A stretch of 61,177 nucleotides of DNA from Octopus bimaculoides (lineage: Eukaryota), in NCBI RefSeq assembly GCF_001194135.2, contig NC_068985.1, positions 69,388,108 to 69,449,284 of the forward strand, given 5' to 3'. Below, in pieces: positions 2-49,600 of this stretch (positions within the stretch are counted from its first letter, which is position 1; every line of letters begins with the position of its first letter). Below the pieces are notes generated by a model. It did no database searches. It had not been told where the DNA came from and was given only the letters and a program-made list of their open reading frames with translations. A program made the position numbers and the translations under genes.

Positions 2-1250
2 CAAGGGTTGGACAAAGTAATGTAAACTTTAAAGAAATTTATTTTAAGATGGGGTAGGACCGCTTTTGGCAGAAATTATAGCTTAAATTCTACGAGATAT
101 GGAATCGTACGAAGATTGAATTGTTTCCAAAGGAAATTTTGTCCATTCTTCAGCTAAAATAGTCTTCAGTTCTTGTAGTGATGATGGTAGAGGATACCGA
201 CTCCTTACCTGTTTTTCTAAAATGCACCATAAGTATTCCACAATATTGAAATCTGGAGACTCTTGTGACCACAAAGCATTTTGAACTTCACTACAATGTT
301 CCCCTTGCTGTTCAGTAACAACTTTAGTTGTGTGAATTGCTGCATCATCATCCTGAAAGATTGCGTTTATTTCCGGAAACAGTTCTGCAACAATAGCATG
401 AATTTGATCAGACAAAATGCTTAAATAGTCTTGACTACTAATTCTGCCATGAAGGAAACCATTGGGCCAGCATATTTCCAAGATATAGCTCCTCAGATCA
501 TTACAGATTCTCCTCCATGTCTGAAAGTTGGAAGAAAGCAGTGTGGGTCAAATCCTTCTTTGGTTGTCTCCACGCGTATACTCGGCCGGTGATCGGAAAT
601 AAGGTAAGGGATAACGCGTCCAAGAAAATAGCATTATTCCACTGCTCTAGGGATCAATTCTGTAGGTTGTTACTCCACTCTAAATGCTTTTTAACATTTC
701 TTTTTGAAACTAGTGGTTTTTTTATTGCAGCCCTCCCGTGAAATCCAGCTTTGTCCAGCTCCCGGTGAACGGTTTCTGTGCAAACTGGGTTCCCGAGGTG
801 GTCGTTATGCTCTGCAGTAATTTTGGGAGCTGCACTTTTGTGACACTTTCTTACAATTCGAGTAAGAGTCCGACGGTCCCTCTCTGGAAGTCTTGGCTTT
901 CTTCCGGAATTTATTTCGAAGAGGTGGTTTTTCTCTCTTTCTCAAAGGTTGTCATTACTTTCGAGACCGTACTTCTTGATGCACCAAATATTTCGTCTGC
1001 TTTCGTTACTCTAGCGCATGCCATACGAGCAACTACAATTAGACTTCTTTGAAAGTCCGATAGATCTATTATTTTAATGAATATTAATTACGTTCTAGTA
1101 ATGATATCTGAAAAGAAACAGCAACTTTAGCAAAACATATTAAGCAACACTAATAATAAATCAAAAAACAAAAACAAAGACGGTTTTATGGATATTTTAA
1201 AACTATGATGCTATGTTACTAAGTGTTTCCATTATTTTGTCCAACCCCTA
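2..1250 (-). mobile_element. Full-length decayed Tc1-family DNA transposon
   Basis: 26-bp TIRs: caagggttggacaaagtaatgtaaac (2-27) vs revcomp of 1225-1250 taggggttggacaaaataatggaaac (22/26 identical). TA follows the right end. Encloses a transposase remnant. Confidence 0.92.
83..1068 (-). pseudogene. Tc1 transposase pseudogene (HTH + DDE) with stops and frameshifts
   Basis: Minus-strand translation gives the N-terminal DLSDFQRSLIVVARM..ARVTKADEIFGASRSTVSKVMTTFEKE (Tc1 HTH) and SGRKPRL. C-terminal FQDDDAAIHT..WSQESPDFNIVEYLW matches FQQDNAPCH/WPSQSPDLNPIEHLW. Confidence 0.9.
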
Positions 1251-3404: not shown

Positions 3405-4044
3405 GGGTCGAAAGCGTGACTCACATTGTTAGTGCTTGTGAAATTCTTGCACAGAATGCGTACAAGCGTGGACATGACAAGGTAGCCCAAATCCTCCACT
3501 TGCTACATTGCCTTAAGTATGAATATACAACGGAAAAGGTAATCCATGAAAAGCGGAAGGCAACAATTCTCTAGAACTTGAACTTGTAGACAAGCAGGGT
3601 ATTATAACATCGAAGGTCGTGTATAGTAACCGTTATGAGGGACAAACACGAGTGCCTAATAGTTGACGTGACAGTGCCTCCAGATCAACATATCATCATG
3701 AAAGAAAGAGAAAATGTTGATAAATATCGAGACATAAGAAGTGAGATCACTAAGATGAGACAGCCACGAGAGTCAAACATAAAGGTTATAGCTATAGTCA
3801 TCGGAGCCTTGGGTTCAAAACCACCCAATCTGAAAAAAATACCACATTTGAAGACTTTAGAAAAGCCCTACAGTTTGATGTATTGCAAAAGACGGCATTA
3901 TTTGGAACTGCAGGCATATTGCGTAAATTACTGTTCGTCTGAGGTCCTCGTGACTTGACACACAGTACAAATGTCCGGTAGATAAAATATTTTCGATCAA
4001 AAACCTCACAATATTGTATACTGTGCGACGTCTATAGTAATGAA

Positions 4045-4117
<73 letters not shown>
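3405..4117 (+). mobile_element. 5'-truncated R4/Dong-like non-LTR retrotransposon (zinc knuckle + restriction-like endonuclease) with (TAA)n tail, copy 1
   Basis: HIVSACEILAQNAYKRGHDKVAQILH; CLIVDVTVPPDQHIIMKERENVDKYRDIRSEITKM..VIAIVIGALG; QKTALFGTAGILRK. Ends in (AAT)n at 4045-4117. Confidence 0.85.
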
Positions 4118-4118
<1 letters not shown>

Positions 4119-4788
4119 CACACAAGTTCAACGGACTTGTGCTGAATGTATGAGAGGAGTGTCCAAAGTGTGACTCCCGTAGTTAGTGCTTGAGAATGTC
4201 TTGCGCAGAAAGACTACAAACGTAGACACGCCCATGTAGCCAAAAATCCGCTCTGGATACTACGCCATAAGTATGGATATGAAGTTACAGGTGCTTGGTA
4301 CAAACATACACCGCAAAACTTAATGGACGAAAAGGGGAAGACAAAAAACCACTCGGACTTTGACTTCCAAACAGAGAAAGTATTACAGCACCGAAGTCCA
4401 GATATAGTAGCCTTCAGGAGGGACAAACAAGAGAGCCTAGCAATTGACGAAGGAGTGGCAGGAAATTAACATATCATCATGAAAGAAAGAGAAAAAGTTG
4501 ATAAATATGGAAACTTAAGAATTGAGATCGCTAACATGTGACAGCTACGTGAATCAAACATAAAGTTTGTAGCTATTGTCATCGGAGCATTGGATTCAAT
4601 ACCAACCAGTCTGAAGAAGCATCTGGAAACTTTAGAAATACACTGCAATCTAGGTGTTTTGCAAAAGTCGGCATTTTGCGTAAAGTACTGTCTGTCTGAG
4701 GTCCTTGTGACTTGGCAAACAGTACAAACTACCGCTTGACATAATATCGTCAATCACCAACATCACATATTTTATACTGTGCGACGAC

Positions 4789-4857
<69 letters not shown>
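4118..4857 (+). mobile_element. 5'-truncated R4/Dong-like LINE, copy 2, directly after the tail of copy 1
   Basis: LAQKDYKRRHAHVA..WYKHTPQ..DFDFQTEKVLQHRSPDIV..KEREKVDKYGNLRIEI..AIVIGALDSIPTSLKKHLETL. Shares the 3' UTR end ..tactgtgcgacg with copy 1. (TAA)n tail at 4791-4857. Confidence 0.85.
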
Positions 4858-4859
<2 letters not shown>

Positions 4860-5289
4860 TGATTATCAGGTACTGGATCGCATTGTTTCTGATCTTAACT
4901 GATTGAAAGTGTCACCATGTACATTGTTTTGTCTTAGGACAAAAGATGGGCTAAAGCAAATATTATACTCTGTACCACTGATTTGCTTGTCAGTTATTTG
5001 ACCCTACTCAATTGAGCATATCTCATGACAGAAATAGTGGGGGAGCATCATAGCCATGTATTGAGAGGAATTCTTTAGGGTTTGCAAACAACTATTAAAC
5101 AACACTTATTCAGGGATCTTATGAGCAGGAAGGGTTACATGACCTGAAAACAATTCTAACTGGACCCCATCTGCAAGGTCATGCGTTGCTTATCTCGATA
5201 TGAAATCACCACATCGCACACATATGATTGTGATGTTTGTGCTTGGTATACCTTTATTCGACGTGTGATTATGATAGGTATATTAGGCT

Positions 5290-6655
5290 TAGTACCCCAG
5301 TGTCTATTTGATGGCATACACGGCTCTTGCACACAATCTCAGCTCTGAATGGATAGATTATAAAAAGGCCTTGGACAGCCTACCGCATTCATGGATATTG
5401 AAATCAATGGATATCTTCAAGATTCCTCATGTGAATTCAAATTTCCTGAGGCACAACATGTCAATGTAAAATACGAATCTACAATTATGCCTGTCTAATA
5501 CAGTACTGACTACAACAAATATTAATATCAACTGCGGCATTTTCCAAGGTGATTCACTTTCATTTTAATTTTCTGTATAGCCCTAATACCCATTACAAGT
5601 GAACTTGTCGGCATTTTGCGTAAAGTACTGTCTGTCTGAGGTCCCTGTGAACAGGGTATGGATATAAACCTGGCGACAAGAAAGTAAGTAATGTGTTTTA
5701 TATGGATGACTTAAAAATCTATAGGAAAGACAATAATTGGCGTGAAGGACTTGTACGTACTGTGAAAGTCATCTGTGATGACACTGGGATGGAATTTAGA
5801 CTTGCTAAATGTGCTAAGGCCACGTTGCAGAAAGGGAAACTGAAGACATTACATTTAATGCTGTTGGCTGTTGACACAGTCAGAAAAGAACTCGAGCAGG
5901 AACAAACTTACAAATATCTCGAAATAAATGAGAGGTCTGGCATTCAGCATGCAAGCATGAAAGAAGATCCGGAAGGAGTATTATAGGAAACTAGTTCGAG
6001 CAGTCCCAAAGTGCGAGTTAAAAGCATGTAACAAGGTGTTAGCTACGAATTCCTTGGCAGTTCTGATTGTTATTTACAGTTTCAGTGTATTGAACTGCAA
6101 TATGAACGAAATAAAGATGATTAACAAGAAAATCCGTAAGCTACTAACTCGCAAGAAGATGCACCGCTCAAAGGCACACGCACATCGTTTTTATCTACCC
6201 AGAGACCAAAGAGGTGGAGGATTGATCCAATTTGAAATCTACAAAATCACCAAAATTGGACTGGCAGAATATCATGAAACATCTGATAACTAGATACTAG
6301 AGTTCGTTGAAAATCTTGAAAGACGTAAGAAGCTTCATTCTGTTAAGCTGAATATTAAAACAAAACTTTCAAGTGAATTCATGCATAATACCCATGTAAA
6401 GTGCATGATGGAAATGCAGCAACTGCAATTGCAAAGAAGATCAAATTAATAGCTTTTGAACAATTGGCTGATAGATGGGAACAAAAAACGTCTGCATGGT
6501 AATATGCAGGCCGTAGGAAACGAGCTTATGTAGACCAGAAGCACGCCCATCAGTGGCTACGGTGCTTAGGGCGGCTAAAGGCAGAGAGTGAAGGATCTAT
6601 CTTGGCTGCCTAAGATCCGATCGTATTGACCCGTAACTATAAAGCCTTTCGATAC
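5290..6655 (+). mobile_element. R4/Dong-like LINE reverse transcriptase and thumb remnant
   Basis: WIDYKKALDSLPHSWI, GIFQGDSLS, FYMDDLKIY, GMEFRLAKCAK, YKYLEI, FYLPRDQRGGGL, LKAESEGSILAA*D..TRNYK. Many stops. Confidence 0.88.
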
Positions 6656-13804: not shown

Positions 13805-14926
13805 ATATATNNNNNNNNNNNNNNNNNNNNNNNNNNNNNNNNNNNNNNNNNNNNNNNNNNNNNNNNNNNNNNNNNNNNNNNNNNNNNNNNNNNNNNNNNN
13901 NNNNNNNNNNNNNNNNNNNNNNNNNNNNNNNNNNNNNNNNNNNNNNNNNNNNNNNNNNNNNNNNNNNNNNNNNNNNNNNNNNNNNNNNNNNNNNNNNNNN
14001 NNNNNNNNNNNNNNNNNNNNNNNNNNNNNNNNNNNNNNNNNNNNNNNNNNNNNNNNNNNNNNNNNNNNNNNNNNNNNNNNNNNNNNNNNNNNNNNNNNNN
14101 NNNNNNNNNNNNNNNNNNNNNNNNNNNNNNNNNNNNNNNNNNNNNNNNNNNNNNNNNNNNNNNNNNNNNNNNNNNNNNNNNNNNNNNNNNNNNNNNNNNN
14201 NNNNNNNNNNNNNNNNNNNNNNNNNNNNNNNNNNNNNNNNNNNNNNNNNNNNNNNNNNNNNNNNNNNNNNNNNNNNNNNNNNNNNNNNNNNNNNNNNNNN
14301 NNNNNNNNNNNNNNNNNNNNNNNNNNNNNNNNNNNNNNNNNNNNNNNNNNNNNNNNNNNNNNNNNNNNNNNNNNNNNNNNNNNNNNNNNNNNNNNNNNNN
14401 NNNNNNNNNNNNNNNNNNNNNNNNNNNNNNNNNNNNNNNNNNNNNNNNNNNNNNNNNNNNNNNNNNNNNNNNNNNNNNNNNNNNNNNNNNNNNNNNNNNN
14501 NNNNNNNNNNNNNNNNNNNNNNNNNNNNNNNNNNNNNNNNNNNNNNNNNNNNNNNNNNNNNNNNNNNNNNNNNNNNNNNNNNNNNNNNNNNNNNNNNNNN
14601 NNNNNNNNNNNNNNNNNNNNNNNNNNNNNNNNNNNNNNNNNNNNTATATATATATATATATATTCGCGGATCCACTATGAAAACTTATAAGAAATACCAG
14701 TTTGGTGCCTAACACGAAAAAGAAAAACCACAAGCTCCGAAGCGAAAACTTTTTGATAGCATAAACATATTAACTCGCCGATTAAAAAGGGAGTGTTTGC
14801 ATCTTAGGTAGAGAGTTCCTATCGAAAAATATACTTTATAACCGAGTCTTTGCAGACTAATCCATTATTTGTTCCGATATCTCGGACAAGATCTTATATT
14901 TTAAACCTTTTTTTACCCTACTGTAG

Positions 14927-18230: not shown

Positions 18231-19210
18231 TTCTTTTATTTGTGAGATGCAGTAGCAGAAAGATTGAAACTGCCCAAAGCCTTGTTATGGGAGGACTTTA
18301 GTAATCTCACGTTAGATTGACCAATTTGCTATTCACCATTCGTTGACATTGTACTAAGAAGTGGTCTTCGACATCAGCCATTTAGAACTCTGCTAGGAGT
18401 CGTTCTCTCTGCAGAGCAGGTAATCCTTCAGAGATGAAGATATTACTTTGTGCATTCCTAAATCCAATCACAATAAAATCCCTCTGAGGACAAAATTCGC
18501 ACCAAGGGGCAAGACAAATCTCACCAAAGCTAAAGTCGCAGAGGGGACTGGATCACTCGAAGATGCCAAGTATCCTAGGGAGCATGAATTGCAGTCTCAG
18601 ATGTTAAAAGACTTACACATTTAAAGTATTCTCAGGCTTGGCATGTTTGCAATATGATAAGGTGGATATTTGCTAGTCGGGGTATTTTAACTGGATTGCC
18701 TTGTTCCTCCGCTTCATTTACTGCATTGCCAGAGGGGCTGTCTTCAAGTATTTCGTCGTGGATGAGCCCTTTCCAATGTCATTAAATGCAGATCATTGAT
18801 TAGTATGTATGCAAATCTGTGCTGCTTGCTAATGGGAACGAAGATAGAAACCATTTTCCTTCGTCCATGACGATTCAGTGTATAAATTATATTTCTGTCT
18901 ACGAGTTACCTTTGCTGATATTCGTATAAGCTGACGGTGAGAGACGAGCACTGAAGCGTATCTCTCTCGTCTAGAGCATGTGGCATTCATGCAGCAAGTG
19001 TGTTTGGACCTTACCTATGAAGTGAAGATAACGACCGACGCTAACATGAGACCTGGGCTTCCCTAATGGACTACCGCGATTTCTCGTAGATGAGTTGGTT
19101 CACGCAATCCTTATTGAACTGAACAAAGGCATTGTCTGTGAGACCGAATTTCCACTCCTTCAAGTGTGAAAAGAGTTTCCGCTTCATTTGTTTCAAACAT
19201 AGAGCATGAT

Positions 19211-19390
19211 ATTTACATTATTTACATTATTTACATTTGACGGATGTTTGTTGTTAACACATCGTTTCGGCTGATATATCCTCCAGCCTTTATCAGATGT
19301 CTTGGGGAAATCTCGAACCAGGTTTCGCATGCGTGAGACATTTTTCGATGTTGTTGTTGTTATTATTGTTATTGTTATTATTATTATTAA

Positions 19391-19444
<54 letters not shown>

Positions 19445-19520
19445 TATTGTCTTTATTTTTCAGGTCACTCCTTGGAATCGAACTCGGAATCTTGGGGTTA
19501 GTAACCACTACGCCATATGC
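19211..19520 (-). mobile_element. tRNA-headed, hammerhead-bearing SINE-like element (family H), copy 1
   Basis: Minus strand: GCATATGGCGTAGTGGTT (A box), GAGTTCGATTCC (B box), (AAT)n, GACATCTGATAAAGGCTGGAGGATATATCAGCCGAAACGATGTGTT, then (AATGTAAAT)n. Confidence 0.85.
19256..19301 (-). ncRNA. Degenerate minimal type I hammerhead ribozyme motif
   Basis: GACAU CUGAUAA A GGCUG(10-nt loop)CAGCC GAAAC GAU GUGUU. Carries G8A and U16.1A changes relative to the four-copy consensus. Confidence 0.65.
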
Positions 19521-19524
19521 GCAC

Positions 19525-19627
19525 GGGCATATGGCGTAGTGGTTAAGTGCACGGGCTACTAATCCCAAGATTCCGAGTTCGATTACTAACAACAACAATA
19601 ACAACAACAACAATAAAAATAATAATG

Positions 19628-19691
<64 letters not shown>

Positions 19692-19893
19692 TAATAATAA
19701 TAACATCGAAAAATATCTTAAGAATGAGAACCCAGGTTCGAAATGTCCCCAAGTCACATGATGAAGGCTAAAGGGTATATCAGTCGAAACGTTGTGTTCA
19801 CAACAAACAAGAATAGGACAAATATCCATCAAATGTAAATAATGTCAATAATGCAAATAATCTACATAATTTCTCATCTCTTAAATATAGAAC
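19525..19893 (+). mobile_element. Family H element, copy 2, head-to-head with copy 1
   Basis: cgggcatatggcgtagtggttaagtgcacgggctactaatcccaagattccgagttcgatt, (AAT)n at about 19588-19703, hammerhead-like motif at 19753-19798, 3' end ..aaatatagaact. Confidence 0.85.
19753..19798 (+). ncRNA. Degenerate minimal type I hammerhead ribozyme motif
   Basis: GUCAC AUGAUGA A GGCUA..CAGUC GAAAC GUU GUGUU. Carries a C3A change. Palindromic AACGUU stem III. Confidence 0.65.
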
Positions 19894-20561
19894 TGTATAG
19901 CGCTTACTAAATGCAGACTTGGAACCTTCATTTGGAAAGGATGTTGCCATTCTATACAGCAATGCTAGAAATAAAGGATTTTGTCCCTTCTACTGTGTTT
20001 GATATCGGGCTACACGACAACTACTATAAATAACAGGAAATAAAATTTATAATGTTCAAAACCAGAAATATCATTAAGCCAACAAACGTACACATCACTG
20101 TGTGTTCCAATAAAACTTTGATATAGATAGTTTATTCATGTATCAGTCTATCATTATACATACGTTCATCGATGTATATGTGTGTATGTCTATATATATA
20201 TATATATATATNNNNNNNNNNNNNNNNNNNNNNNNNNNNNNNNNNNNNNNNNNNNNNNNNNNNNNNNNNNNNNNNNNNNNNNNNNNNNNNNNNNNNNNNN
20301 NNNNNNNNNNNNNNNNNNNNNNNNNNNNNNNNNNNNNNNNNNNNNNNNNNNNNNNNNNNNNNNNNNNNNNNNNNNNNNNNNNNNNNNNNNNNNNNNNNNN
20401 NNNNNNNNNNNNNNNNNNNNNNNNNNNNNNNNNNNNNNNNNNNNNNNNNNNNNNNNNNNNNNNNNNNNNNNNNNNNNNNNNNNNNNNNNNNNNNNNNNNN
20501 NNNNNNNNNNNNNNNNNNNNNNNNNNNNNNNNNNNNNNNNNNNNNNNNNNNNNNNNNNNNN

Positions 20562-22214: not shown

Positions 22215-23862
22215 TGGTGGTTGTCTACTTCTTATACAGAGTTTGACCACCTCCTGTACCTACACCTTAGCAACATCATGGCGTCGGATGTGATTTTTTA
22301 AACCAGACAATGTTCTAAAAAGACACCCACATGGATTGCACTTCTGATTTCCACCACCAATACCTGCAGATAAGTTATGCTCTTTGTGGATCTTAACACG
22401 TCTTTTTAGGCCTCCATTGGCCTTGCAAATCTTCTGGCATACACTGCATTCAAAGGTGTGCACAGTCATATAGTCAGAATAGTTAGTGGAGGCTTGTTTT
22501 CCATGTGTTTACAGATGAGATTTGAGACCACCCAAAGTCAGGCATGGTCTGTCACAAACTGTGCACACAAAAAGGGCATTTTCGCTTACCTTCTCGATAG
22601 TTACATTCTTCCTTAAATCTCTTTTGAGTCTTTCTTACATTATCATGGCCTCTGCAAATGCTTTTACACCGCACCACACTTTTGTTCGCCATCCAACCAA
22701 ACGAAGCAAGGCTTTCTATGTCTTCTGGAACCATTCTAAGTGACTTCATAGTAGTCCTTATGCCGTCCTAAACCTTTTTTTAGGTTCACACCGATAACGT
22801 TTCCCCTCTGCAAGCTCAACTTAAAACATCTGTTTCGACACGCGTTCATCTGCCATTCGAACAATATGGCCACACCCTCTAAATTGGCTCCTCAAAATCA
22901 TAGCTTTAATTGAGGTGATGCCTGAAGATGCATGGACATCTGTGTTTAGAGTAAAATAACTCCATTTAATTTTTTAAATGCAATGAAAGCATTTTTGGTG
23001 GAATAATTCTAACAGTTTAAAATGCTTTTCATAACAAGTCCAAGTTTCACAGTAATACAACAGTCATGGTAAGACAAATGATTTGTAAAGTAGCAGCTTT
23101 GTATTCTTATTTATATGTTGCTGGCACCAAACACGTGACTCCAAGCGACCAAATGTTTTTGTAGTCCTTTGAATTCCCAGCTGTATTTCTGTAACAAGAT
23201 TTCCATCATTTTGAACAGCGCTTGCAAGGTAGACGAACGAATGAACGACCTCAAGTAACTTTCCATTAACAAAAGTTTTAGTGGGGTTACAAACAGCAAC
23301 ACACACAGATTGATGCATTACAACTATTTATTTTTGTTTCAAGTTGATGGTTAAGTCAAAATCATCACAAACTGATTCAAATGCAGATACAAGAGACTGC
23401 AGACCTGTTTCAGAATGAGTGAGAAGATTACAATCGTCAGCATACAAAGTTCCCTAATAAGTGAAGTGAAAAGTTTCGTTTTGAATTTCAGTCTGATCAG
23501 ATTAAAAACATTCCCTGTTGTTCGTTATTTTATGTAAATAGCCTCCTCGGAGTTTTGAAAAGCGTGTGACAACACAACAGTAAAGTATATTGCAAAGAGG
23601 GTGGGTGCATAAAGGTTTCTTGCTTTACTCCATTTTCCACAGCAAAAGGTTCAGAAATCCAGCGGAAATTAACTCTAGCTTTCATACATTGATGCTATGC
23701 CCTGACCATGTTTATAAATTTTTGTGGGTAACTTATTTTCCTTAGAATTACTCACAGAGCATTTCGATTAACAGTAGCGAATGCTTTGCTCAATTCAAGA
23801 AAGTAATAGTATAGAACAACATTGTGTTCAATGCACTTTTCTTGTAATTGCATGACGCAGGC
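22215..23862 (-). mobile_element. RTE/BovB-like LINE 3' half (RT, thumb, C-terminal C2H2 fingers), decayed
   Basis: QLQEKCIEHN..FLELSKAFATVNR; LYADDCNLLTHSETGL; VNGKLLEVVHSFVYLAS..FGRLESRVW..NTKLLLYKSFVLP; CSVCQKICKANGGLKRRVKIH..CNPCGCLFRTLSGLKNHIRRH. Confidence 0.9.
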
Positions 23863-27070: not shown

Positions 27071-27932
27071 ATAGATATGTGTATGTGTGTGTGAGTGTGT
27101 GCGTGTGTGTGTGTGTGTGTGTTGAAGCATATGTTGTTGTGAGTGGGGAGAGTCATTCTCTTTTAGTGGCTTCTTATATAACACACTCACCATATAGTTT
27201 CCACTCATTTACTTATTTATATTGCTACCTTTTCAATAGTCGTTGATTCTTACCGTTATCCAAGCTGCATGTATGTTTTGTCTGATTGTGCGCATATGTG
27301 TGGGTCAATGTGCATGCACGTACACGTATGGATGTATGTACGTATATATATGTACGCATGTATGTGTGTGTTTTCATGTACGTGTATATATATATAGNNN
27401 NNNNNNNNNNNNNNNNNNNNNNNNNNNNNNNNNNNNNNNNNNNNNNNNNNNNNNNNNNNNNNNNNNNNNNNNNNNNNNNNNNNNNNNNNNNNNNNNNNNN
27501 NNNNNNNNNNNNNNNNNNNNNNNNNNNNNNNNNNNNNNNNNNNNNNNNNNNNNNNNNNNNNNNNNNNNNNNNNNNNNNNNNNNNNNNNNNNNNNNNNNNN
27601 NNNNNNNNNNNNNNNNNNNNNNNNNNNNNNNNNNNNNNNTGTGTGTGTGTGTGTGTGTGTGTGTGTATTTATGTATGTATGTGTACGTTTGTATGTATGT
27701 ATTCTGCATATTCATGTATTTCTGTGTTCGTTTTTGTGCGTTTGTGTGTCTATGTGTGTTTGCATGCGTGTGTGTACCTCTGTCTCCTTGTGTGTGTATG
27801 TTTGAATGTGTCTGTGTATGGGTTTTTGTGACTAGGTTCTGCGCCTTTTTTGTATGGATATGTGTCACCATATGTGTCTTTTGTAAAGTGAGTGTGTAAG
27901 TATGTTCACGTGCTTCAGTCTTCATTTGCGTA

Positions 27933-28109
27933 TATTATTTACATTATTTACACTTGACGGATGTTTGTCCTCATCTTGTTTGTTGTTAACACAACGTTTC
28001 GGCTGATATACTCTCCAGCATTCTTCTAGGGTCCTGGGAAATGTTCGAACCTGGGTTCTCATTTGTAAGTTATTTTTCGATATTCTTGTTGTTATTATTA
28101 TTAACATTA

Positions 28110-28184
<75 letters not shown>

Positions 28185-28270
28185 TTATTATTATTATTCA
28201 GGGCACTGGAATCGAACACGGAATCTTGGGGTTAGTATCTCGCGCCCTTAACCACTACGTCATATGCCCG
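27933..28270 (-). mobile_element. Family H element, copy 3 (full head)
   Basis: cgggcatatgacgtagtggttaagggcgcgagatactaaccccaagattccgtgttcgattcc, (AAT)n, then CTAGAAGAATGCTGGAGAGTATATCAGCCGAAACGTTGTGTT at 27988-28034. Confidence 0.85.
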
Positions 28271-28271
28271 T

Positions 28272-28390
28272 AGGCTGGAGAGTATATCAGCTGAAAAGTT
28301 GTGTTAGCAACAAACAAAATAAGGACACATATCCGTCGAATGTAAATAATGTAAATAATGTTTATAATTCCTTATCTATCAAATATAGAA
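28272..28390 (+). mobile_element. Family H element, copy 4 (5'-truncated at hammerhead stem II), inverted relative to copy 3
   Basis: aggctggagagtatatcagctgaaaagttgtgtt..aatgtaaataatgt..aaatatagaa. The copy 3+4 pair is flanked by the 13-bp direct repeat cttcatttgcgta (27920-27932 and 28391-28403). Confidence 0.85.
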
Positions 28391-28438
28391 CTTCATTTGC
28401 GTACGCAGGTGTATATGTGTGCGTGTCTGTTCATATTA

Positions 28439-43429: not shown

Positions 43430-44566
43430 TTTGAAATCAGCCATGAAGACAAGATGGTTGATATTCATCATACACCTTGTAAGCATATGTTTTCAATCAG
43501 GAGTATACCTAAGGCAGACTGCATTAAAAATAAGGACAAAGTATTTATAAGTTTCCGAGGAGGATTTCAGTTATCTAATACTTTCCTAATTATTCTACGC
43601 GTACCACCAGGCTATTTCGTACATACGATTTGTTGCATTTATCTATTTTTCGCATTTCTTCTTGACTATTCATGGGTAGAAGGTACATACAACATCAACA
43701 ATATAACACATGTGGTGCGTCTTATCGACCACCACAAGGTCCGCTTTATTATACTCTAGTACACATTCTGTTTGGATTGGGAAATCCCAGAAGATTTTGC
43801 TATTCTCCTACACCGCTATTTGCGTCTCTTTAGCCCTCACTTTTTGTACAGTTTCCAACGTACCACTTGCGCTACCTGATCGTGTCTCCACAACCTCTGG
43901 TGGTTTTTGGAAAGTCTAGGGCATTCGTTTGTGATATGGGCAATGGTTTCATCCATTGTATTACAAATGTGACACTTGCTCATTCCAGAGGTTGACTTTC
44001 TAGTTCGAGGCCAAAGCTTAGTCTTGCGCTGCCAGTATAGTCTTCTCGATCTCTTTTTTCAGTGTTCCGCTCTTTAGCCTTTCCACCTATACTTTCCAGC
44101 AACTTCCGCTGTGACTACATGGAATTGATTGTGTTCTCTCTTCTTGCGTAATTCTTCTTCATGTCCCTTTTGTACTTCTTCCTTTGTTTTTCCTTTTTTT
44201 ACTCTGCTTCCAATACTTCCCCTTTCCTGACACTACCAAGGTTTCCTTTCTTTGGGTTAGGTATATCTTTAAGCTCTCGAGTTCGATTCATACTCAGTCT
44301 TCTACACTTACCAGCCCTCTTTCTCCAATTGCTCTCTTCATGTTTAGGTCTGCACGTGGATAATGAGCCGTACGTATCGTTAGCAACTTTCTTGAGTCTT
44401 TATCTCTTTTATCTCCTCGTCTGTCCACTACAACATCACAAGGCCATACCAAACAACTGCGACTGCGCGCGAGTTTATCGCCGAAATTATGTTTCTAGCA
44501 TTCAGCTTTGAGGACAATACTTTTCTCACTCGCCGCAGATTCTCTCTTGTCCTTTCGTTCATGTCG

Positions 44567-44570
<4 letters not shown>
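43430..44570 (-). mobile_element. 5'-truncated R4/Dong-like LINE (thumb, CCHC, RLE)
   Basis: LRRVRKVLSSKLNARNIISAINSRAVAVV; LKSGTLKKEIEKTILAAQD; KCHICNTMDETIAHITNECPRL..RHDQVAQVVRWKL; IFWDFPIQTECVLEYNKADLVVVDK. Confidence 0.85.
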
Positions 44571-44650
<80 letters not shown>

Positions 44651-45200
44651 GTTATTATTAATGATAATAATAATAATATTTTTCCTTCGTAATATATTGT
44701 AGGTAAATATGCACCGATGTCTTTAGTCATCTGTTAAGCCACAAGAACCTCTGACAGATATTACTTTCCTTCAGATGTGAGCAGTATCCAATAAGGCTAC
44801 TTTTTGAAACACATCAATCTTGCATGGGATTTACAGTTGCCTTTAGAAGTCTTGAAGTTTCAATGGGATTGAGCCCAATGTTCCGATCACCACTGGTATC
44901 ACTTTCATATTACACTCTCGCATTCCATACAGCCTCGCTACATACAGTCTTGCTATTCCCATTTTCAAATCATAGTCCTAGAGTATCGTTACTTTTCTAT
45001 CCACCGGCATAATTTTTCTTGGTACACCCTCATACCAGTTCTCTGTCACTTCGTATTGGTATCTAAGACATAAGAGCCAATGAAAATACACACACAATTT
45101 ATCGTGGAGACGCTTCCATACATTTTGTGCAAATCTCTCACAACCACTTACCAAGTGGATCACATTTTCCACGCTCTTTCCACTTCTAGGTGTCAGAAGT
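44571..45200 (-). mobile_element. R4/Dong-like LINE 3' fragment whose (TAA)n tail (44571-44680) abuts the 5' end of the copy at 43430-44570
   Basis: ENVIHLVSGCERFAQNVWKRLHDKLCVYFHWLLC..WYEGVP..VTIL(WD). Ends KVALLDTAHI*RKV, then a short UTR and (AAT)n on the minus strand. Confidence 0.82.
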
Positions 45201-46471
45201 TTCCTATATGTTATATATATATCTATCTATCTAATATATATAAAACATTTTTTTGCCTCAAAATATTTTCATTTCCAAGTGTGTTATTAAAAATATAATT
45301 ATTACCTATGCTAGTAAAAGGGGAGAAATTTAAGGTGACATGAATTGTTACTTCTATATAATCCATTGATGCACTCCTCATTAATTTTGTTTACATTTAC
45401 AATCATCAAGCGATGTTTACATCAATAGATTTCGAACTCAGAACATATATCACATTTGCCATTTGCCAAACGCTCTAACGATCTTGTCTATCAACTGACC
45501 TTATATTATATAAAATGGCATTTTCTCCAAATTAAAGGAGTTGATTGCACAGTATTGTTGCCCCGTTTTTCTTATAAAATCTTATTAGAGAATGCTGGCT
45601 GGATCCGAATATTTTGTGTGAAATTAGACGTAAACTGTGGAAGCCAAATCGAACGGAATTATTCATGTAACAACCGAATTTATATCTAATTTTACACAAT
45701 CTATTGTGCTTTAGGTGCCTTTACTAGATCGACACTTGTAGAAGTATTAGAATAAAATACTAATATGCAGATAGCATTAATGTCACAGTTACTTCTTCCC
45801 TTTAATCAAACATTCGTGGAGGCTATACTAAACCATTATGGGTGGATGATAACTTTCCTCGTCTCAGCCGTAATGAAAGTGCAAAATAAAAAATACACTG
45901 ATTTTTTTATGTTTTTCGTTTATGGCTCTATACACGTCTAGTAGTATTGTTTGCTTTTAACTTACACTTCTACTTCATGTCTGAGTGGTTTGCAATAGAA
46001 GACCACTCAGGTGCAAAAACAATTGTTTTAATAAAAAAAAGCATCCAACTCCTCATAGCAAATAAAATTACAATATACTTCTATTATTATGGATTCATGT
46101 CTGCACATCTGTGTATGTATGAGTGCGTGTGTTTGTGTGCGTATGTGTGTGAGTGTGTGTGTGTGTGCATGTGTACGTGTTTGTGTGTGTGATGTTGTCT
46201 CGGTGTGAGGATTACTTGTCATTTTCAAATAATGTAATCTGCTTAATGAGAATTGCACAGACACACCACACACACACACACACACTTACACACATATACA
46301 CATACACATATATATACGCATGCGTATGTATATATGTGTGTGTTATGCATGTATGTATATTATGTCATACATATGCACACACTACATGCATGCATACATA
46401 CATATATATATATTGCAAACACACGCGCAGGCACACACACGCACACACACGCACACACACACACACACGCA

Positions 46472-46648: not shown

Positions 46649-49600
46649 CATACACCCACATATGAATAGCAAACACTCACGCACAGAAATATATATTCAC
46701 ACTCACAAATACGCATAAAGAAAAAAAAAATCATGGAAATAAATCAGCAAAATTTACATTAACATAATGACCTTTTTTTAAAGTTGCATTCCTATTTTCA
46801 ATGACATTTCAAGCTAAATGAGCTAATTTCTCATATAAAAATATTTTATTCTGAAAGTCAAAAGACCCATTTTGCTAAGTCAATCAATCATTTGAATGAG
46901 AAGTCATTAGTAGCTTGAATTTAATTAATTACGTCCCATAATTACTCTGCTTGACTGTTAAGTATTGCTTGCTCAACTGAATGTAAAATAATTACAAAAA
47001 CGAAAAATTTGAAGAAAATGTCACGAAACACAAATATGATGGAAATATTTTGTTAGTCTTTGTGTTCAATAGTTCCTGTAGCGCAAAAGATCTTTCTGGT
47101 TTAGCTTTAGTGCCATATCAAGTAACCCATTTTACGCTTATATGAACTCTAATGAAAGTGTATAGCAACAAAATATCGTTCACTTCCTTAAACTTGCTTC
47201 AAACACAATAAGGTACAACATAGATCTACATATATATCTTTACACAGTAGTCTCAATGATTATAAGGAGAATGATCCTTTCTATATAATATTATGTTAAC
47301 ATTGGAAATATGGAATTGAAATAAGAAATATTTATAAAACATGCACATAAATCCTATATTTGTTTTTCGTTTTGTTTTTATCCAATTATTATGAAGTTGT
47401 TAAAATGTCTAGACGGTGTTAATAATGTATAGTACTATTTCAATCATTTTAGAAACCAGCAGTATGATATACCCTGTGATTCAGATCTTAGACATTTTAT
47501 AAAATAACAGATTTTATTATAGGTTGAATTTGTTACGACTTGGAGAATACTCGTGTATATTTTACTCTTTCTTTATACATTGTGATTAGTTTAGCAATAT
47601 AGTGTTTACATAGAGGATAATATCTGTTTCTATGTGCTTCTATGATATTCTACATTGTCAAATATTTAAGTAGTCAATAATTTCATTTTAACCACAGAAA
47701 CATTCCTTATACATACCTAGGTGTATTCTCTGAGGTGTAAATATTAGTTTCAAGCTCCCATTTCCGGTGGCTATATATCATATCTACAAATACCTCGCCA
47801 TATCGTCGTTCACCTATCACAGTTCAACTATCACGCTTTATTATTTAAGCTTACTTCGATTCTCTCGTGGTGTTCTTTCGCATTTAAAATAAAATAGATA
47901 TATACAAATCATAAATTACAGTACTTCGCTGATTGTCAACTATTACGCGAGCTTTCAAACATGACAACAGCGATAGTCGGTCGAGGGATTACTTTATGTA
48001 TGTTTATATATATATATGTGCTTTAATGCAATTCCAGTGTCATACCAGCAATCCAACAATCCAATAATATTAATCCGCATATACAAAAACAGCCACACTA
48101 ACAATCTAATATACTTCCTTCATCACCTGCCCCATGAATATCATTGTGGTTTCGACACCTGAGCAGTACCATTCAATCCGGTGGTGTCAATAGCACTATA
48201 ATAAGTGTTGTTTGGGAACAAAAAACAAAAGAAAGAACTTTCAAACATATTTATACATTCATGTACACATATATACAAANNNNNNNNNNNNNNNNNNNNN
48301 NNNNNNNNNNNNNNNNNNNNNNNNNNNNNNNNNNNNNNNNNNNNNNNNNNNNNNNNNNNNNNNNNNNNNNNNNNNNNNNNNNNNNNNNNNNNNNNNNNNN
48401 NNNNNNNNNNNNNNNNNNNNNNNNNNNNNNNNNNNNNNNNNNNNNNNNNNNNNNNNNNNNNNNNNNNNNNNNNNNNNNNNNNNNNNNNNNNNNNNNNNNN
48501 NNNNNNNNNNNNNNNNNNNNNNNNNNNNNNNNNNNNNNNNNNNNNNNNNNNNNNNNNNNNNNNNNNNNNNNNNNNNNNNNNNNNNNNNNNNNNNNNNNNN
48601 NNNNNNNNNNNNNNNNNNNNNNNNNNNNNNNNNNNNNNNNNNNNNNNNNNNNNNNNNNNNNNNNNNNNNNNNNNNNNNNNNNNNNNNNNNNNNNNNNNNN
48701 NNNNNNNNNNNNNNNNNNNNNNNNNNNNNNNNNNNNNNNNNNNNNNNNNNNNNNNNNNNNNNNNNNNNNNNNNNNNNNNNNNNNNNNNNNNNNNNNNNNN
48801 NNNNNNNNNNNNNNNNNNNNNNNNNNNNNNNNNNNNNNNNNNNNNNNNNNNNNNNNNNNNNNNNNNNNNNNNNNNNNNNNNNNATATATATATATATATA
48901 TATATAATAAAATGAGAGCAGGAAAATGACATCAAATTAATCATCACACAAGATATACGTCCAATATAATATTGTATTAATAGATGTATAAATATATAAA
49001 GAACGATTATTTAGATAGTTTAAAAGTTTAAAATACCTTACGATCGCTTCATGGATGCATTATTCATATCAATCTAAAATTGATAATCATTATTAGGTAA
49101 TACATCCACTCGTCAGAGAAAAATAGAATGAATATCTGTGTAGTGAATCGAATGCTATTTAAAAATATATGAAAAAGATGCTGTTTAAAGATGTTGTTTA
49201 AAAAGTTACTGGCATAGATATCTGTTGGTACAATCTTGTGCTAACAAGTTTGAAGAAATAATATACATCATAAACACATACATTTTCTATCTGTCTTTGT
49301 ACAAAAATGTCGCTTTACATGTTATTATATAAACAGGATATTTTAACGAATAAAAAGTGTTGAATGGTACAACAATGCACTATAATACAAACAATAGTCT
49401 ATATAGCTGTTGTAATTTAGTCATCCATAGTCTGATATAATATTTTGGAATAAAATTTCTTCTTCAGATAGTGTCTAATAAATATCAATGGGGGACTGGA
49501 TCTCGTGGGGTCGAAGCTGAACCCAAACGCCATTCCATTTGTTTTGTCATTTGTATTCCATTCGATTATATAATTTCATATTAAAATTTTAACTCATGGT

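What the first reader, a model, noticed from the sequence alone, without database searches (positions are those of the whole stretch)
19211..19893. tRNA-headed SINE-like element carrying a Penelope-type minimal hammerhead ribozyme
Seen: four related copies (19211-19520 minus, 19525-19893 plus, 27933-28270 minus, 28272-28390 plus). The layout is an A/B-box tRNA-like head, an (AAT)n spacer, a hammerhead-like motif and an (AATGTAAAT)n end. Their consensus is GACAC-CUGAUGA-A-GGCUG(gagggtatat)CAGCC-GAA-AC-GU-U/-GUGUU. That gives stem I (GACAC/GUGUU), a full CUGANGA/GAAA core, a 5-bp stem II and a loopless palindromic stem III (AACGUU). Established: minimal type I hammerheads with a palindromic, dimer-dependent stem III mark Penelope-like element pseudo-LTRs. 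An extra base after A9 is tolerated in some natural hammerheads. Inference: this is a Pol III-driven non-autonomous RNA parasite that captured a Penelope terminus, rather than borrowing a LINE tail as typical SINEs do. Each copy here has at least one core change (G8A/U16.1A, C3A, an inserted A, truncation), so these copies are probably inactive.
Basis: partly seen in the sequence, partly recalled or inferred. Interest (0 to 1): 0.9.

Follow-up and report, generated by a model that had tools for sequence, protein, structure and literature searches.

The report
Octopus SINE with Penelope-type hammerhead
The four repeats are decayed copies of an octopus short mobile element that joins a tRNA-like promoter head to a minimal hammerhead ribozyme of the kind found in Penelope-like retrotransposons. 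They sit in the head-to-head pairs typical of Penelope-type insertion, so this is a real and apparently undescribed variant of a design already known from schistosome SINEs and animal retrozymes.

Summary
Four related copies lie at the stated coordinates, each built as head, (AAT)n spacer, hammerhead-like module and (AATGTAAAT)n.

No window copy has an intact ribozyme, and the window alone leaves core base C3 undecided. I recovered further copies through their spurious ORFs:
- one UniProt entry and one RefSeq protein of Octopus bimaculoides;
- about 1800 hits in public assemblies, of which 171 peptide stretches were tallied;
- eight extra DNA copies of the octopus type.

The 12-copy DNA consensus and the peptide tally both give an intact minimal type I hammerhead: ACAC-CUGANGA-A-GGCUGG...CAGCC-GAAAC-GU-U-GUGU. 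It has every trait published for Penelope-like-element hammerheads.

Full-length copies start at tRNA position +1. Seven of about ten independent loci are head-to-head inverted pairs. In three of them the inverted arm lacks the last 30-40 nt, and two are flanked by 12-13 bp direct repeats. This is the published Penelope insertion signature.

A related module in another organism forms 129-nt headless tandem arrays, like retrozymes.

Not shown:
- homology to an actual Penelope element;
- Pol III transcription;
- cleavage.

Rfam and ARAGORN recognise neither the ribozyme nor the head.

Precedents (schistosome Sm-alpha, retrozymes) make this a new variant, not a new kind.

The parts
19211..19522 (-). 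Copy A. Full-length, but with a 13-nt deletion in the head and without the terminal ~30-nt tail. It is the left arm of inverted pair 1.
   Evidence: blastn/nhmmer; alignment
19523..19893 (+). Copy B. Full-length with the complete 3' tail. It is the right arm of inverted pair 1, and its 5' end abuts the 5' end of A.
27933..28271 (-). Copy C. Full-length but without the terminal tail. It is the left arm of inverted pair 2.
28272..28390 (+). Copy D. 5'-truncated inside hammerhead helix II, with the complete 3' tail. It is the right arm of inverted pair 2.
19532..19586 (+). Pol III-type box A (19532-19542, TGGCGTAGTGG) and box B (19575-19586, GAGTTCGATTAC) of copy B. The equivalents are 19505-19515 / 19474-19485 (-) in A and 28252-28262 / 28208-28219 (-) in C.
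   Evidence: Not recognised as tRNA by ARAGORN or Rfam.
19597..19703 (+). (AAC)n(AAT)n internal microsatellite spacer of copy B. In A it is 19360-19448 and in C 28081-28198. In related copies elsewhere the spacer is only AATAATAAC (L010) or a degenerate AT-rich stretch (L005, L015).
   Evidence: TRF
19735..19742 (+). Second box-B-like GGTTCGAA, about 10 nt upstream of hammerhead helix I. In A it is 19312-19319 (-) and in C 28044-28051 (-). It is conserved in the group 2 elements too.
19753..19798 (+). Hammerhead segment of copy B (GTCAC-ATGATGA-A-GGCTA..CAGTC-GAAAC-GT-T-GTGTT). C3>A.
19256..19301 (-). Hammerhead segment of copy A (GACAT-CTGATAA-A-GGCTGG..CAGCC-GAAAC-GA-T-GTGTT). G8>A and U16.1>A.
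27988..28033 (-). Hammerhead segment of copy C. The 5' box is scrambled (CCCTAGAAGAAT); the 3' half is intact (CAGCC-GAAAC-GT-T-GTGTT).
28272..28305 (+). 3' half of the hammerhead in copy D (AGGCTGG..CAGCT-GAAAA-GT-T-GTGTT). C11.1>U and C15.2>A, the same two changes as the O. bimaculoides copy P0005.
19862..19893 (+). Unique 3' terminal tail (..CTACATAATTTCTCATCTCTTAAATATAGAAC) of copy B. The D equivalent is 28361-28390. A and C lack it. It is present in P0005, L003 and L005.
27920..27932 (+). Left copy of the perfect 13-bp direct repeat CTTCATTTGCGTA flanking pair C+D. The right copy is at 28391-28403.
19182..19190 (+). CTTCATTTG lies 20 nt left of pair A+B, with a second copy at 19926-19934, 32 nt to the right. 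The four occurrences of this 9-mer in the window are exactly these flanks of the two pairs.
   Evidence: Unexplained: target preference or terminal microhomology.

Best explanation
The four repeats are old, dead copies (about 16% from consensus) of an octopus SINE-like retroelement of roughly 300-370 bp. It has two modules.

**Module 1, the head.** This is a tRNA-type head of about 70 nt with Pol III A and B boxes. It is followed by an expandable (AAT)n spacer.

**Module 2, the 3' module.** This is about 150-190 nt long. In the family consensus it encodes an intact minimal type I hammerhead: helix I ACAC/GUGU, CUGANGA, a bulged A, helix II GGCUGG/UCAGCC, GAAA, and a loopless ACGU palindrome in place of helix III, with cleavage after GUU. 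A conserved downstream block follows (AACAACAAACAAGAUGAGGAC..), then (AAUGUAAAU)n and a unique tail ending AAAUAUAGAAC.

**Proposed mechanism.**
1. Pol III starts at tRNA position +1 and transcribes the whole unit. This is inferred from the boxes and from the 5' ends of the copies.
2. The 3' module mimics the hammerhead-bearing terminus of a Penelope-like element and is used in trans by that element's RT and GIY-YIG endonuclease. This is inferred from the ribozyme type and the insertion architecture.
3. Integration leaves head-to-head inverted pairs, in some of which one arm lacks the last 30-40 nt, and at two loci 12-13 bp direct repeats flank the pair. This is seen directly in the sequence.
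4. The hammerhead can act only when two sense copies pair through the ACGU palindrome, so monomeric SINE RNA stays whole. Tandem or bimolecular forms could be cut to unit length, as in retrozymes. This is inferred from the literature.
For: **Copies and layout.**

**Family membership beyond the window.** The sense-frame translation of the 3' module hits O. bimaculoides UniProt A0A0L8FV75 and RefSeq XP_052825882.1. It also hits 49 cluster representatives and 1823 proteins.

**Intact consensus, peptide level.** The peptide consensus TP[DE]EGWR.YQPKRC is the exact translation of ACA CCU GAN GAA GGC UGG .. CAG CCG AAA CGU UGU. Over 171 stretches:
- the C3 codon is Pro in 85%;
- G5A6 are kept in 96%;
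- G8A9 are kept in 94%;
- A13A14 are kept in 99%;
- U17G1.1 are kept in 92%.

Most losses are at CpG sites. Pro was absent from the query profile, so it is not an ascertainment artefact.

**Intact consensus, DNA level.** The 12-copy octopus-type DNA consensus is intact and passes the descriptor.

**Penelope-type traits.** All four published traits are present (PMC4209133).

**Copy ends.** Full-length 5' ends are at (AC)GGGCATATGG, with box A at +8, in B, C and L005 and, more diverged, in L010 and L015.

**Inverted pairs.** They occur at window loci 1 and 2 and at L003, L010, L015, L008 and L009. L005 and L006 are solo, and L007 is cut by the contig end.

**Short inverted arm.** The inverted arm lacks the last 30-40 nt in A, C and L008.

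**Flanking repeats.** 13/13 at locus 2 and 11/12 at L008.

**Match to the published signature.** These features match Craig et al. 2021, and the observation of 'dual min-HHRs 100-700 bp apart on opposite strands' in Cervera 2014.

**Related tandem form.** A headless 129-nt tandem array, 2.7 units at 98% identity, each unit with an intact minimal hammerhead, lies at L008 6030-6379.
Against: - No Penelope RT/GIY-YIG sequence of the species could be compared. The window holds only non-LTR RT fragments and a Tc1/mariner remnant.
- Rfam hammerhead models and the tRNA model give no hit, even on intact-core copies. ARAGORN finds nothing. The head does not fold as a cloverleaf.
- There is no covariation beyond chance in helices I and II.
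- Core positions decay as fast as the rest (13.8% against 16.0%). Nothing therefore shows selection on the ribozyme in genomic copies.
- The D/P0005 subfamily shares two changes that weaken helices II and III, so an intact ribozyme may not be needed for spread.
- No T4 Pol III terminator sits at a fixed place.
- The published in vitro activity of minimal hammerheads is low.
Confidence: 0.65

Rival explanations
1. This is a Pol III-promoted retrozyme rather than a SINE in the usual sense. The replicating unit would be the ~130-150 nt hammerhead unit, running from cleavage site to cleavage site. It would be cut out of multimeric or bimolecular RNA, circularised by a tRNA ligase and copied by rolling-circle reverse transcription. 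The tRNA-like head would only be a fused promoter.
For: A homologous module forms a headless 129-nt tandem array with 98% identical units. Its array boundaries lie 8 nt before the cleavage site and at the unit's 3' end. The 3' ends AAAUAUAGAAC (octopus type) and AAAUUUAGAC (group 2) are conserved. The retrozyme model is in PMC7229834 and PMC7761336.
Against: In the window and in all octopus-type contigs the head, spacer and 3' module move together as one unit, with fixed 5' ends. No octopus-type tandem array was seen. Cutting at the hammerhead would separate the head from the 3' end.
Confidence: 0.2
2. This is an ordinary LINE-dependent tRNA SINE. The short tandem (AATGTAAAT)n near the 3' end would be a LINE-type tail, and the hammerhead would be a relic that plays no part in mobility.
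For: The 3' short tandem repeats and the 12-13 bp flanking repeats also fit LINE-type target-primed insertion. The window holds non-LTR RT fragments next to (ATA)n runs. The D/P0005 subfamily shares hammerhead-weakening changes.
Against: Seven of about ten loci are inverted duplicates with both arms carrying the same sequence. LINE twin priming on one RNA does not give this. The element does not end in the repeat; it ends in a unique conserved tail. The hammerhead and its downstream block are conserved between two families that differ elsewhere.
Confidence: 0.12
3. The hammerhead resemblance is chance, the module is really a small coding sequence, or the palindromic pairs are assembly artefacts.
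For: No single window copy has a complete motif. Rfam is silent. A ~45-codon ORF is open in the consensus.
Against: The consensus from independent sources is a perfect descriptor match, with 0 hits in 20 Mb of simulation. There is no marked third-position excess of change (mismatch rate 0.136 / 0.159 / 0.179 at codon positions 1 / 2 / 3). The arms of each pair differ by 12-16%. Inverted pairs recur in unrelated assemblies.
Confidence: 0.03

Closest known systems
Sm-alpha / Sj-alpha SINE-like elements of Schistosoma (Ferbeyre et al. 1998; Laha et al. 2000; summarised in PMC6765202)
   Same: Both are short non-coding dispersed repeats with a Pol III-type (tRNA-like) promoter followed by a type I hammerhead. 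In both, the ribozyme works best between two copies.
   Different: The schistosome ribozyme is a canonical type I hammerhead with loop-loop contacts and a short helix III hairpin. Here helix III is absent altogether (the Penelope-type minimal form). The octopus element also has an internal (AAT)n spacer and inserts as inverted pairs. Sequence homology to Sm-alpha was not tested.
Minimal hammerheads of Penelope-like element pseudo-LTRs (Cervera & de la Pena 2014, PMC4209133; Lunse et al. 2016, cited)
   Same: Core boxes, bulged nucleotide after A9, G10.1-C11.1, palindromic 15.2/16.2 without loop 3, helix I of 4-5 bp, and frequent dual motifs on opposite strands a few hundred bp apart.
   Different: There the motif is defined in the repeats flanking an RT/GIY-YIG ORF, and the many dispersed solo motifs were guessed to be truncated elements. 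Here the carrier is a defined tRNA-headed unit with its own 5' end, and no Penelope ORF is nearby. Helix II is 5-6 bp rather than 7-8.
Animal non-LTR retrozymes (Cervera & de la Pena 2020, PMC7229834), proposed as non-autonomous Penelope derivatives (bioRxiv 10.64898/2026.07.22.740005)
   Same: Both are non-coding hammerhead-bearing repeats presumed to use Penelope machinery. A homologous module elsewhere (L008) is a tandem array with unit-length repeats.
   Different: Retrozymes are defined as tandem arrays of 170-400 nt units, mostly with classical type I hammerheads, and no tRNA-like or Pol III head is reported. The octopus copies are dispersed single units or inverted pairs with a tRNA-type head.
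Non-autonomous Penelope-like elements (e.g. MRC1 in Chlamydomonas, Craig et al. 2021; short non-autonomous Penelope in Heliconius, PMC6685494)
   Same: Both are short and non-coding, with insertion structures bearing tandem or inverted copies and an extension at one end.
   Different: Those share their 3' ends demonstrably with autonomous partners and have no small-RNA-derived head. Here the partner is unknown and a tRNA-type head is present.

Membership tests
Hammerhead ribozyme, canonical type I (Rfam Hammerhead_1 and related models) | Conserved core: CUGANGA, GAAA, and a U-H cleavage site | tested here: met
   Met in the 12-copy DNA consensus and in 171 translated stretches. Not met in any of the four window copies.
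Hammerhead ribozyme, canonical type I (Rfam Hammerhead_1 and related models) | Helix III hairpin closing the core | tested here: not met
   Only A15.1-C15.2 / G16.2-U16.1 with no loop, that is an ACGU palindrome.
Hammerhead ribozyme, canonical type I (Rfam Hammerhead_1 and related models) | Match to the Rfam covariance models | tested here: not met
   No hammerhead hit at gathering score or at E<=10, in the window or in intact-core copies L005/L006.
Hammerhead ribozyme, canonical type I (Rfam Hammerhead_1 and related models) | Self-cleavage | not testable with these tools
   Needs in vitro transcription of monomer and dimer.
Penelope-type minimal hammerhead (Cervera & de la Pena 2014) | No helix III or loop 3; palindromic positions 15.2/16.2 allowing a dimeric helix III | tested here: met
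   GAAAC-GU-U in the consensus and in B, C, L005, L006 and L008.
Penelope-type minimal hammerhead (Cervera & de la Pena 2014) | Unpaired nucleotide between A9 and G10.1 | tested here: met
   CUGANGA-A-GG in both families. The codon is Glu or Asp in 94% of stretches, which shows that G8 and A9 are kept and that an extra position follows.
Penelope-type minimal hammerhead (Cervera & de la Pena 2014) | G10.1-C11.1 pair; short helix I (4-5 bp); longer helix II | tested here: met
   GGCUGG/UCAGCC (5 bp plus one G.U) and GACAC/GUGUU. 79% of cells are paired, against 21-53% when the partners are slid. Helix II is shorter than the 7-8 bp of the schistosome families.
Penelope-type minimal hammerhead (Cervera & de la Pena 2014) | Location in the pseudo-LTR of an element encoding RT and GIY-YIG endonuclease | not testable with these tools
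   No Penelope sequence of the species was reachable. The ten window ORFs scanned show only RVT_1, zf-RVT and Tc1/mariner remnants.
tRNA-derived SINE (SINE2/tRNA) | Internal Pol III promoter: box A and box B at tRNA-like positions at the 5' end | tested here: met
   TGGCGTAGTGG at +8 and GAGTTCGATTCC at about +52. The strict joint pattern has 0 expected matches by chance.
tRNA-derived SINE (SINE2/tRNA) | Recognisable similarity to a tRNA | tested here: inconclusive
   ARAGORN finds 0. There is no Rfam tRNA hit at E<=10 and no cloverleaf MFE. Acceptor and D-arm complementarity is visible by eye in copy C only.
tRNA-derived SINE (SINE2/tRNA) | Short, non-coding, dispersed, with fixed 5' end and flanking target duplications | tested here: met
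   There is no marked codon-position bias.
tRNA-derived SINE (SINE2/tRNA) | 3' end shared with a partner LINE | not testable with these tools
   No LINE library of the species was available.
Penelope-like-element insertion architecture (Craig et al. 2021) | Inverted, often 5'-truncated copy abutting the 5' end of another copy | tested here: met
   Window loci 1 and 2, and L003, L010, L015, L008 and L009.
Penelope-like-element insertion architecture (Craig et al. 2021) | 30-40 bp extension present at one end only | tested here: met
   B and D, but not A and C, carry the terminal ~30 nt. The same holds in L008. L003 is an exception: both arms have it.
Animal non-LTR retrozyme | Head-to-tail tandem array of hammerhead-bearing units | tested here: not met
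   No tandem copies in the window or in octopus-type contigs. Met only by the related group 2 array in L008.

The most novel reading that the evidence does not exclude
A major octopus SINE family would be a Pol III-driven retrozyme hybrid. A tRNA-type promoter would be fused to an ancient hammerhead unit of about 150 nt that is shared across distant invertebrates. The hammerhead plus the conserved downstream block (AACAACAAACAAGAUGAGGAC) would be the element that Penelope reverse transcriptase recognises. Dimeric cleavage would yield small circular RNAs in octopus tissues. If so, this would explain the thousands of 'orphan' minimal hammerheads reported in animal genomes as the cargo of tRNA-headed SINEs rather than truncated Penelope elements.
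Probability: 0.25. Interest if true: 0.7.

Novelty: new variant of a known kind. Interest (0 to 1): 0.5.

Why it matters
Minimal hammerheads are scattered by the thousand through animal genomes. They were provisionally written off as debris of truncated Penelope-like elements, and animal retrozymes were said to carry no motif pointing to their autonomous partner.

This locus offers a defined carrier: a tRNA-headed unit with a fixed 5' end. It also offers an insertion signature that points to Penelope machinery, namely inverted pairs, a one-sided tail and flanking repeats.

If the link holds, three things follow:
- It would be a clear case of a Pol III SINE that parasitises a Penelope-like element rather than a LINE.
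- It would tie together SINEs, retrozymes and Penelope elements.
- It would add a ribozyme-bearing repeat to octopus transcripts. One RefSeq gene model already starts inside a copy.

The copies in this window are themselves inert.

Tried and rejected
1. **Rfam scans.** Scans of the window at gathering score and of both loci at E<=10 gave no hammerhead or tRNA. Scans of the intact-core outside copies gave no hammerhead at their positions. I read this as a limit of the models for a helix-III-less ribozyme, not as evidence against the motif.
2. **ARAGORN and folding of the head.** No tRNA and no cloverleaf.
3. **Exact 23-mer of the 3' box** in JGI metagenomes and in GTDB genomes. 0 hits.
4. **Reaching more of the same genome through the Tc1/mariner ORF.** Only 60-68% relatives turned up, from one ENA assembly. 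Their 26 kb held no copy.
5. **Chromosome-level O. bimaculoides DNA via XP_052825882.1.** The gene range was too long and no DNA was returned.
6. **Covariation.** None beyond chance in nine DNA copies. W/R against Q/R at pair 10.4-11.4 shows no association (OR 1.26, p=0.6). The pattern fits independent CpG decay from a C-G master.
7. **Segmental duplication of the two loci.** Rejected, because the flanks share nothing beyond the element.
8. **Composite by repeated nested insertion into SINE tails.** Rejected, because head, spacer and tail recur as one unit with common ends in several sources, and direct repeats flank the whole pair.
9. **Assembly-artefact palindromes.** Rejected, because the arms differ by 12-16%.
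10. **Micropeptide gene.** Rejected.
11. **P0166, a 538-aa member of a hit cluster.** It is a bacterial NuoF-like protein and irrelevant.
12. **Supplementary alignments of Cervera 2014.** Not held. Ferbeyre 1998, Lunse 2016 and Albertin 2015 are not held either.
Full report
**1. What is in the window**

The window is low-GC (25-41%), microsatellite-rich draft sequence with eleven N gaps, which points to a eukaryote.

blastn and nhmmer, using the head and tail of one copy, find exactly four related copies:
- A, 19211-19522 (-)
- B, 19523-19893 (+)
- C, 27933-28271 (-)
- D, 28272-28390 (+)

A, B and C share one layout:
- a head of about 70 nt beginning (AC)GGGCATATGG, with box A TGGCGTAGTGG at +8 and box B GAGTTCGATTCC;
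- (AAC)n(AAT)n of 30-39 units;
- a block CATCGAAAAAT..GAGAACCCAGGTTCGAAAT with a second box-B-like motif;
- the hammerhead-like segment;
- AACAACAAACAAGATGAGGACAAATATCCGTC;
- two or three AATGTAAAT units.

B and D continue into a unique ~30-nt tail ending AAATATAGAAC. A and C lack that tail. D begins inside helix II.

Within the shared 3' module the copies are 81-91% identical. The arms of one pair are no closer to each other than to copies at the other locus.

**2. The ribozyme motif in the window copies**

- A has CTGATAA (G8>A) and CGATG (U16.1>A).
- B has ATGATGA (C3>A) and one mismatch each in helices I and II.
- C has a scrambled 5' box.
- D lacks the 5' half and has C11.1>U and C15.2>A.

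I wrote a descriptor for the minimal hammerhead. It asks for:
- helix I of at least 4 bp;
- CUGANGA;
- 0-1 extra nt;
- helix II of at least 4 bp with G10.1-C11.1;
- GAAA;
- a paired 15.2/16.2 with 0-4 nt between;
- U, then H.

It finds nothing in the window, even with two box mismatches allowed.

Rfam finds no hammerhead or tRNA at gathering score or at E<=10. ARAGORN finds no tRNA.

**3. Getting more copies**

No eukaryotic DNA collection was searchable, so I used the spurious reading frame that runs through the 3' module.

- A profile of that frame from A-D hit UniProt A0A0L8FV75 of Octopus bimaculoides.
- An exhaustive HMMER search gave 49 cluster representatives.
- A second profile gave 1823 proteins.
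- One hit is RefSeq XP_052825882.1 of O. bimaculoides, on a 97.8-Mb chromosome record of GCA_001194135.2.

The family is therefore an octopus repeat. The window is most likely octopus, but its species is not proven.

The hits fall into two groups.

*Group 1, octopus type.* The peptide pattern is ..KTPDEGWRVYQPKRCVNNKQDEDKYPSNVNNVNN.

*Group 2.* These come mostly from one ENA assembly, ERZ21867824, and from NCBI GCA_052426985.1. Both organisms are unknown to me. The pattern is QTPEEGRRTYRPKRCGNNNKDEDNSPKTLNDKN, often in tandem.

Contigs fetched for some hits gave eight more octopus-type DNA copies at five loci (L003, L005, L007, L010, L015). They also gave copies at three group 2 loci (L006, L008, L009).

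**4. The consensus is an intact Penelope-type minimal hammerhead**

The peptide consensus TP[DE]EGWR.YQPKRC is the exact translation of ACA CCU GAN GAA GGC UGG .. CAG CCG AAA CGU UGU. Over 171 stretches:
- the codon holding C3 is Pro in 85%;
- G5A6 are kept in 96%;
- G8A9 are kept in 94%;
- G10.1 is kept in 90%;
- C11.1 is kept in 80% (the main loss is Leu, a CpG transition);
- A13A14 are kept in 99%;
- C15.2G16.2 are kept in 65% (the rest are almost all Cys or His, again CpG transitions);
- U17G1.1 are kept in 92%.

In the octopus-type subset C3 is C in 75%. Pro at that codon was absent from my first query profile, so it was not selected for.

The majority consensus of 12 octopus-type DNA copies reads GACAC-CTGAcGA-A-GGCTGG-AGgGTATAT-CAGCC-GAAAC-GT-T-GTGTT and passes the descriptor. 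Twenty Mb of simulated sequence gave 0 hits at up to one mismatch.

The motif shows all the traits that Cervera & de la Pena 2014 list as emerging from Penelope-element hammerheads beyond their search pattern:
- a nucleotide between A9 and G10.1;
- G10.1-C11.1;
- palindromic 15.2/16.2 with no loop 3;
- a short helix I.

Rfam finds no hammerhead even in the intact-core copies L005 and L006. This is what one would expect if its type I models require the helix III hairpin that this class lacks by definition.

**5. No sign of selection in genomic copies**

- Helices I and II are supported by the consensus: 79% of cells are paired, against 21-53% when the partners are slid. There are no compensatory changes beyond chance.
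- The one pair that differs between families is 10.4-11.4, U-A against C-G. All four combinations occur without association (OR 1.26, p=0.6), as expected from independent CpG decay of a C-G master.
- Core positions differ from the consensus as often as other positions (13.8% against 16.0%).
- The three codon positions change at similar rates.

The copies are neutrally decaying retrocopies. The ORF is not a gene.

**6. Architecture and likely mobilisation**

*5' ends.* Full-length copies in the window and elsewhere start at the same base, tRNA position +1. This is what retrocopies of a Pol III transcript should do.

*Inverted pairs.* Both window loci are head-to-head pairs. Five more loci have the same arrangement:
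- L003 has two 5'-truncated arms.
- L010 has two full arms.
- L015 has a short inverted 3' fragment abutting a full copy.
- L008 has an inverted SINE-like copy and, about 140 bp away, a plus-strand tandem array.
- L009 has two opposed copies.

L005 and L006 are solo. L007 is cut by the contig end.

*One-sided tail.* In A, C and L008 the inverted arm stops 30-40 nt short of the true 3' end.

*Flanking repeats.* Pair C+D is flanked by a perfect 13-bp direct repeat, CTTCATTTGCGTA. The L008 complex is flanked by CTTAAAAAYTGT, matching at 11 of 12 positions.

*Comparison with the literature.* Craig et al. 2021 describe Penelope-like insertions in these terms: an inverted 5'-truncated copy adjacent to the 5' end, and a 30-40 bp tail at one end only. 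They say these features are not seen with LINE-type insertion. Cervera 2014 noted dual minimal hammerheads 100-700 bp apart on opposite strands. LINE twin priming on one RNA would not duplicate the same sequence on both arms.

I therefore favour mobilisation by Penelope RT/EN. I could not compare the module with any Penelope element, and the window itself holds none.

**7. Relation to retrozymes**

In L008 the group 2 module forms 2.7 head-to-tail units of 129 nt at 98% identity. Each unit has an intact CUGAAGA-A-GGCCGG..CGGCC-GAAAC-GU-U hammerhead and no head.

The same organism also has head-bearing single units (L006, and L008 minus strand). In these, box-like motifs precede the hammerhead.

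Groups 1 and 2 share the box-B-like motif upstream, the hammerhead, the AA(C/T)AACAA.AAAGATGA(G/A)GACAA block and the AAAT(A/T)TAGA(A)C end. They differ elsewhere.

The octopus 3' module is thus a relative of small retrozyme-like units, here fused to a tRNA-type head.

**8. What is known already**

- Pol III-promoter-plus-hammerhead SINE-like elements have been known in schistosomes since 1998.
- Minimal hammerheads mark Penelope pseudo-LTRs and are also dispersed by the thousand.
- Animal retrozymes have been called a kind of SINE. A 2026 preprint argues they are non-autonomous Penelope derivatives.
- Short non-autonomous Penelope elements are reported in butterflies and algae.

None of the papers I could search describes any of the following:
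- a tRNA-type head on a minimal-hammerhead carrier;
- a hammerhead in an octopus SINE;
- the inverted-pair signature for such SINEs.

Whether this family equals one of the octopus SINEs OK, OR1 or OR2 of Ohshima & Okada 1994, or a Repbase or Dfam entry, I could not check.

**9. Verdict**

Penelope dependence, Pol III transcription and catalysis remain inferred.

It is a new variant of a known kind and of moderate interest. The four window copies are dead.

Noticed in passing
window 19182-19190, 19926-19934, 27920-27928, 28391-28399: The 9-mer CTTCATTTG occurs exactly four times in 61 kb, all on the + strand, and all four flank the two inverted pairs. At locus 2 it is part of the 13-bp flanking repeat. 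At locus 1 it lies 20 and 32 nt outside the element ends. Similar strings follow the 3' end in other sources (L005 AACATTTAAG, L007 TTCATGTTTAAG). It may be a target preference or terminal microhomology.
   Followed up: partly
P0016 = RefSeq XP_052825882.1 (O. bimaculoides, GCA_001194135.2): The predicted 'dystrobrevin beta isoform X1' starts with about 30 residues (..GEGWRVYQPKCCVNNKQDEDKYPSK) translated from the SINE's hammerhead module. Either a copy is exonised or used as a first exon, or the gene model is wrong.
   Followed up: partly
L008 5713-6379 (ENA ERZ21867824, ctg121048l): A compound insertion flanked by a 12-bp repeat. It consists of an inverted head-bearing hammerhead unit, a second unrelated tRNA-like head (box A TGGCGTAACGG, box B GGTTCAATTC, minus strand, about 5930-6030), and then 2.7 headless 129-nt hammerhead units at 98% identity.
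   Followed up: partly
window 19735-19742, 19312-19319 (-), 28044-28051 (-); L006 10080-10095: A second box-B-like motif (GGTTCGAA or GAGTTCGA) sits 10-20 nt upstream of the hammerhead in both families. The 3' module may itself descend from a tRNA-like unit.
   Followed up: no
window 86-941 (-): Tc1/mariner transposase remnant (HTH_Tnp_Tc3_2 and DDE_3). Its closest relatives, at 60-68% identity, are in the same ENA assembly that holds the group 2 hammerhead elements.
   Followed up: partly
window 3608-6290 (+), 23067-23327 (-), 43840-45226 (-): Non-LTR reverse-transcriptase fragments (RVT_1, zf-RVT), several ending next to (ATA)n/(TTA)n runs at 4034-4117, 4790-4857 and 44568-44660. This may be a LINE family with an (AAT)n tail, which could be the source of the SINE's internal (AAT)n.
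   Followed up: no
window 54773-56708 (-): ORFs that look by eye like Helitron Rep/helicase remnants. Pfam gave no hit for the two pieces tested, so this is unconfirmed.
   Followed up: partly
L006 2728-3003 (-): Two fragments matching the 3' part of eukaryotic 28S rRNA (E=1e-8 and 6e-5, just below gathering score), in a non-rDNA context.
   Followed up: no
window, 11 N runs (e.g. 13811-14644, 48280-48883): Most assembly gaps are bordered by (TA)n/(CA)n repeats. This is typical of a short-read scaffold, and repeats inside the gaps are unseen.
   Followed up: no
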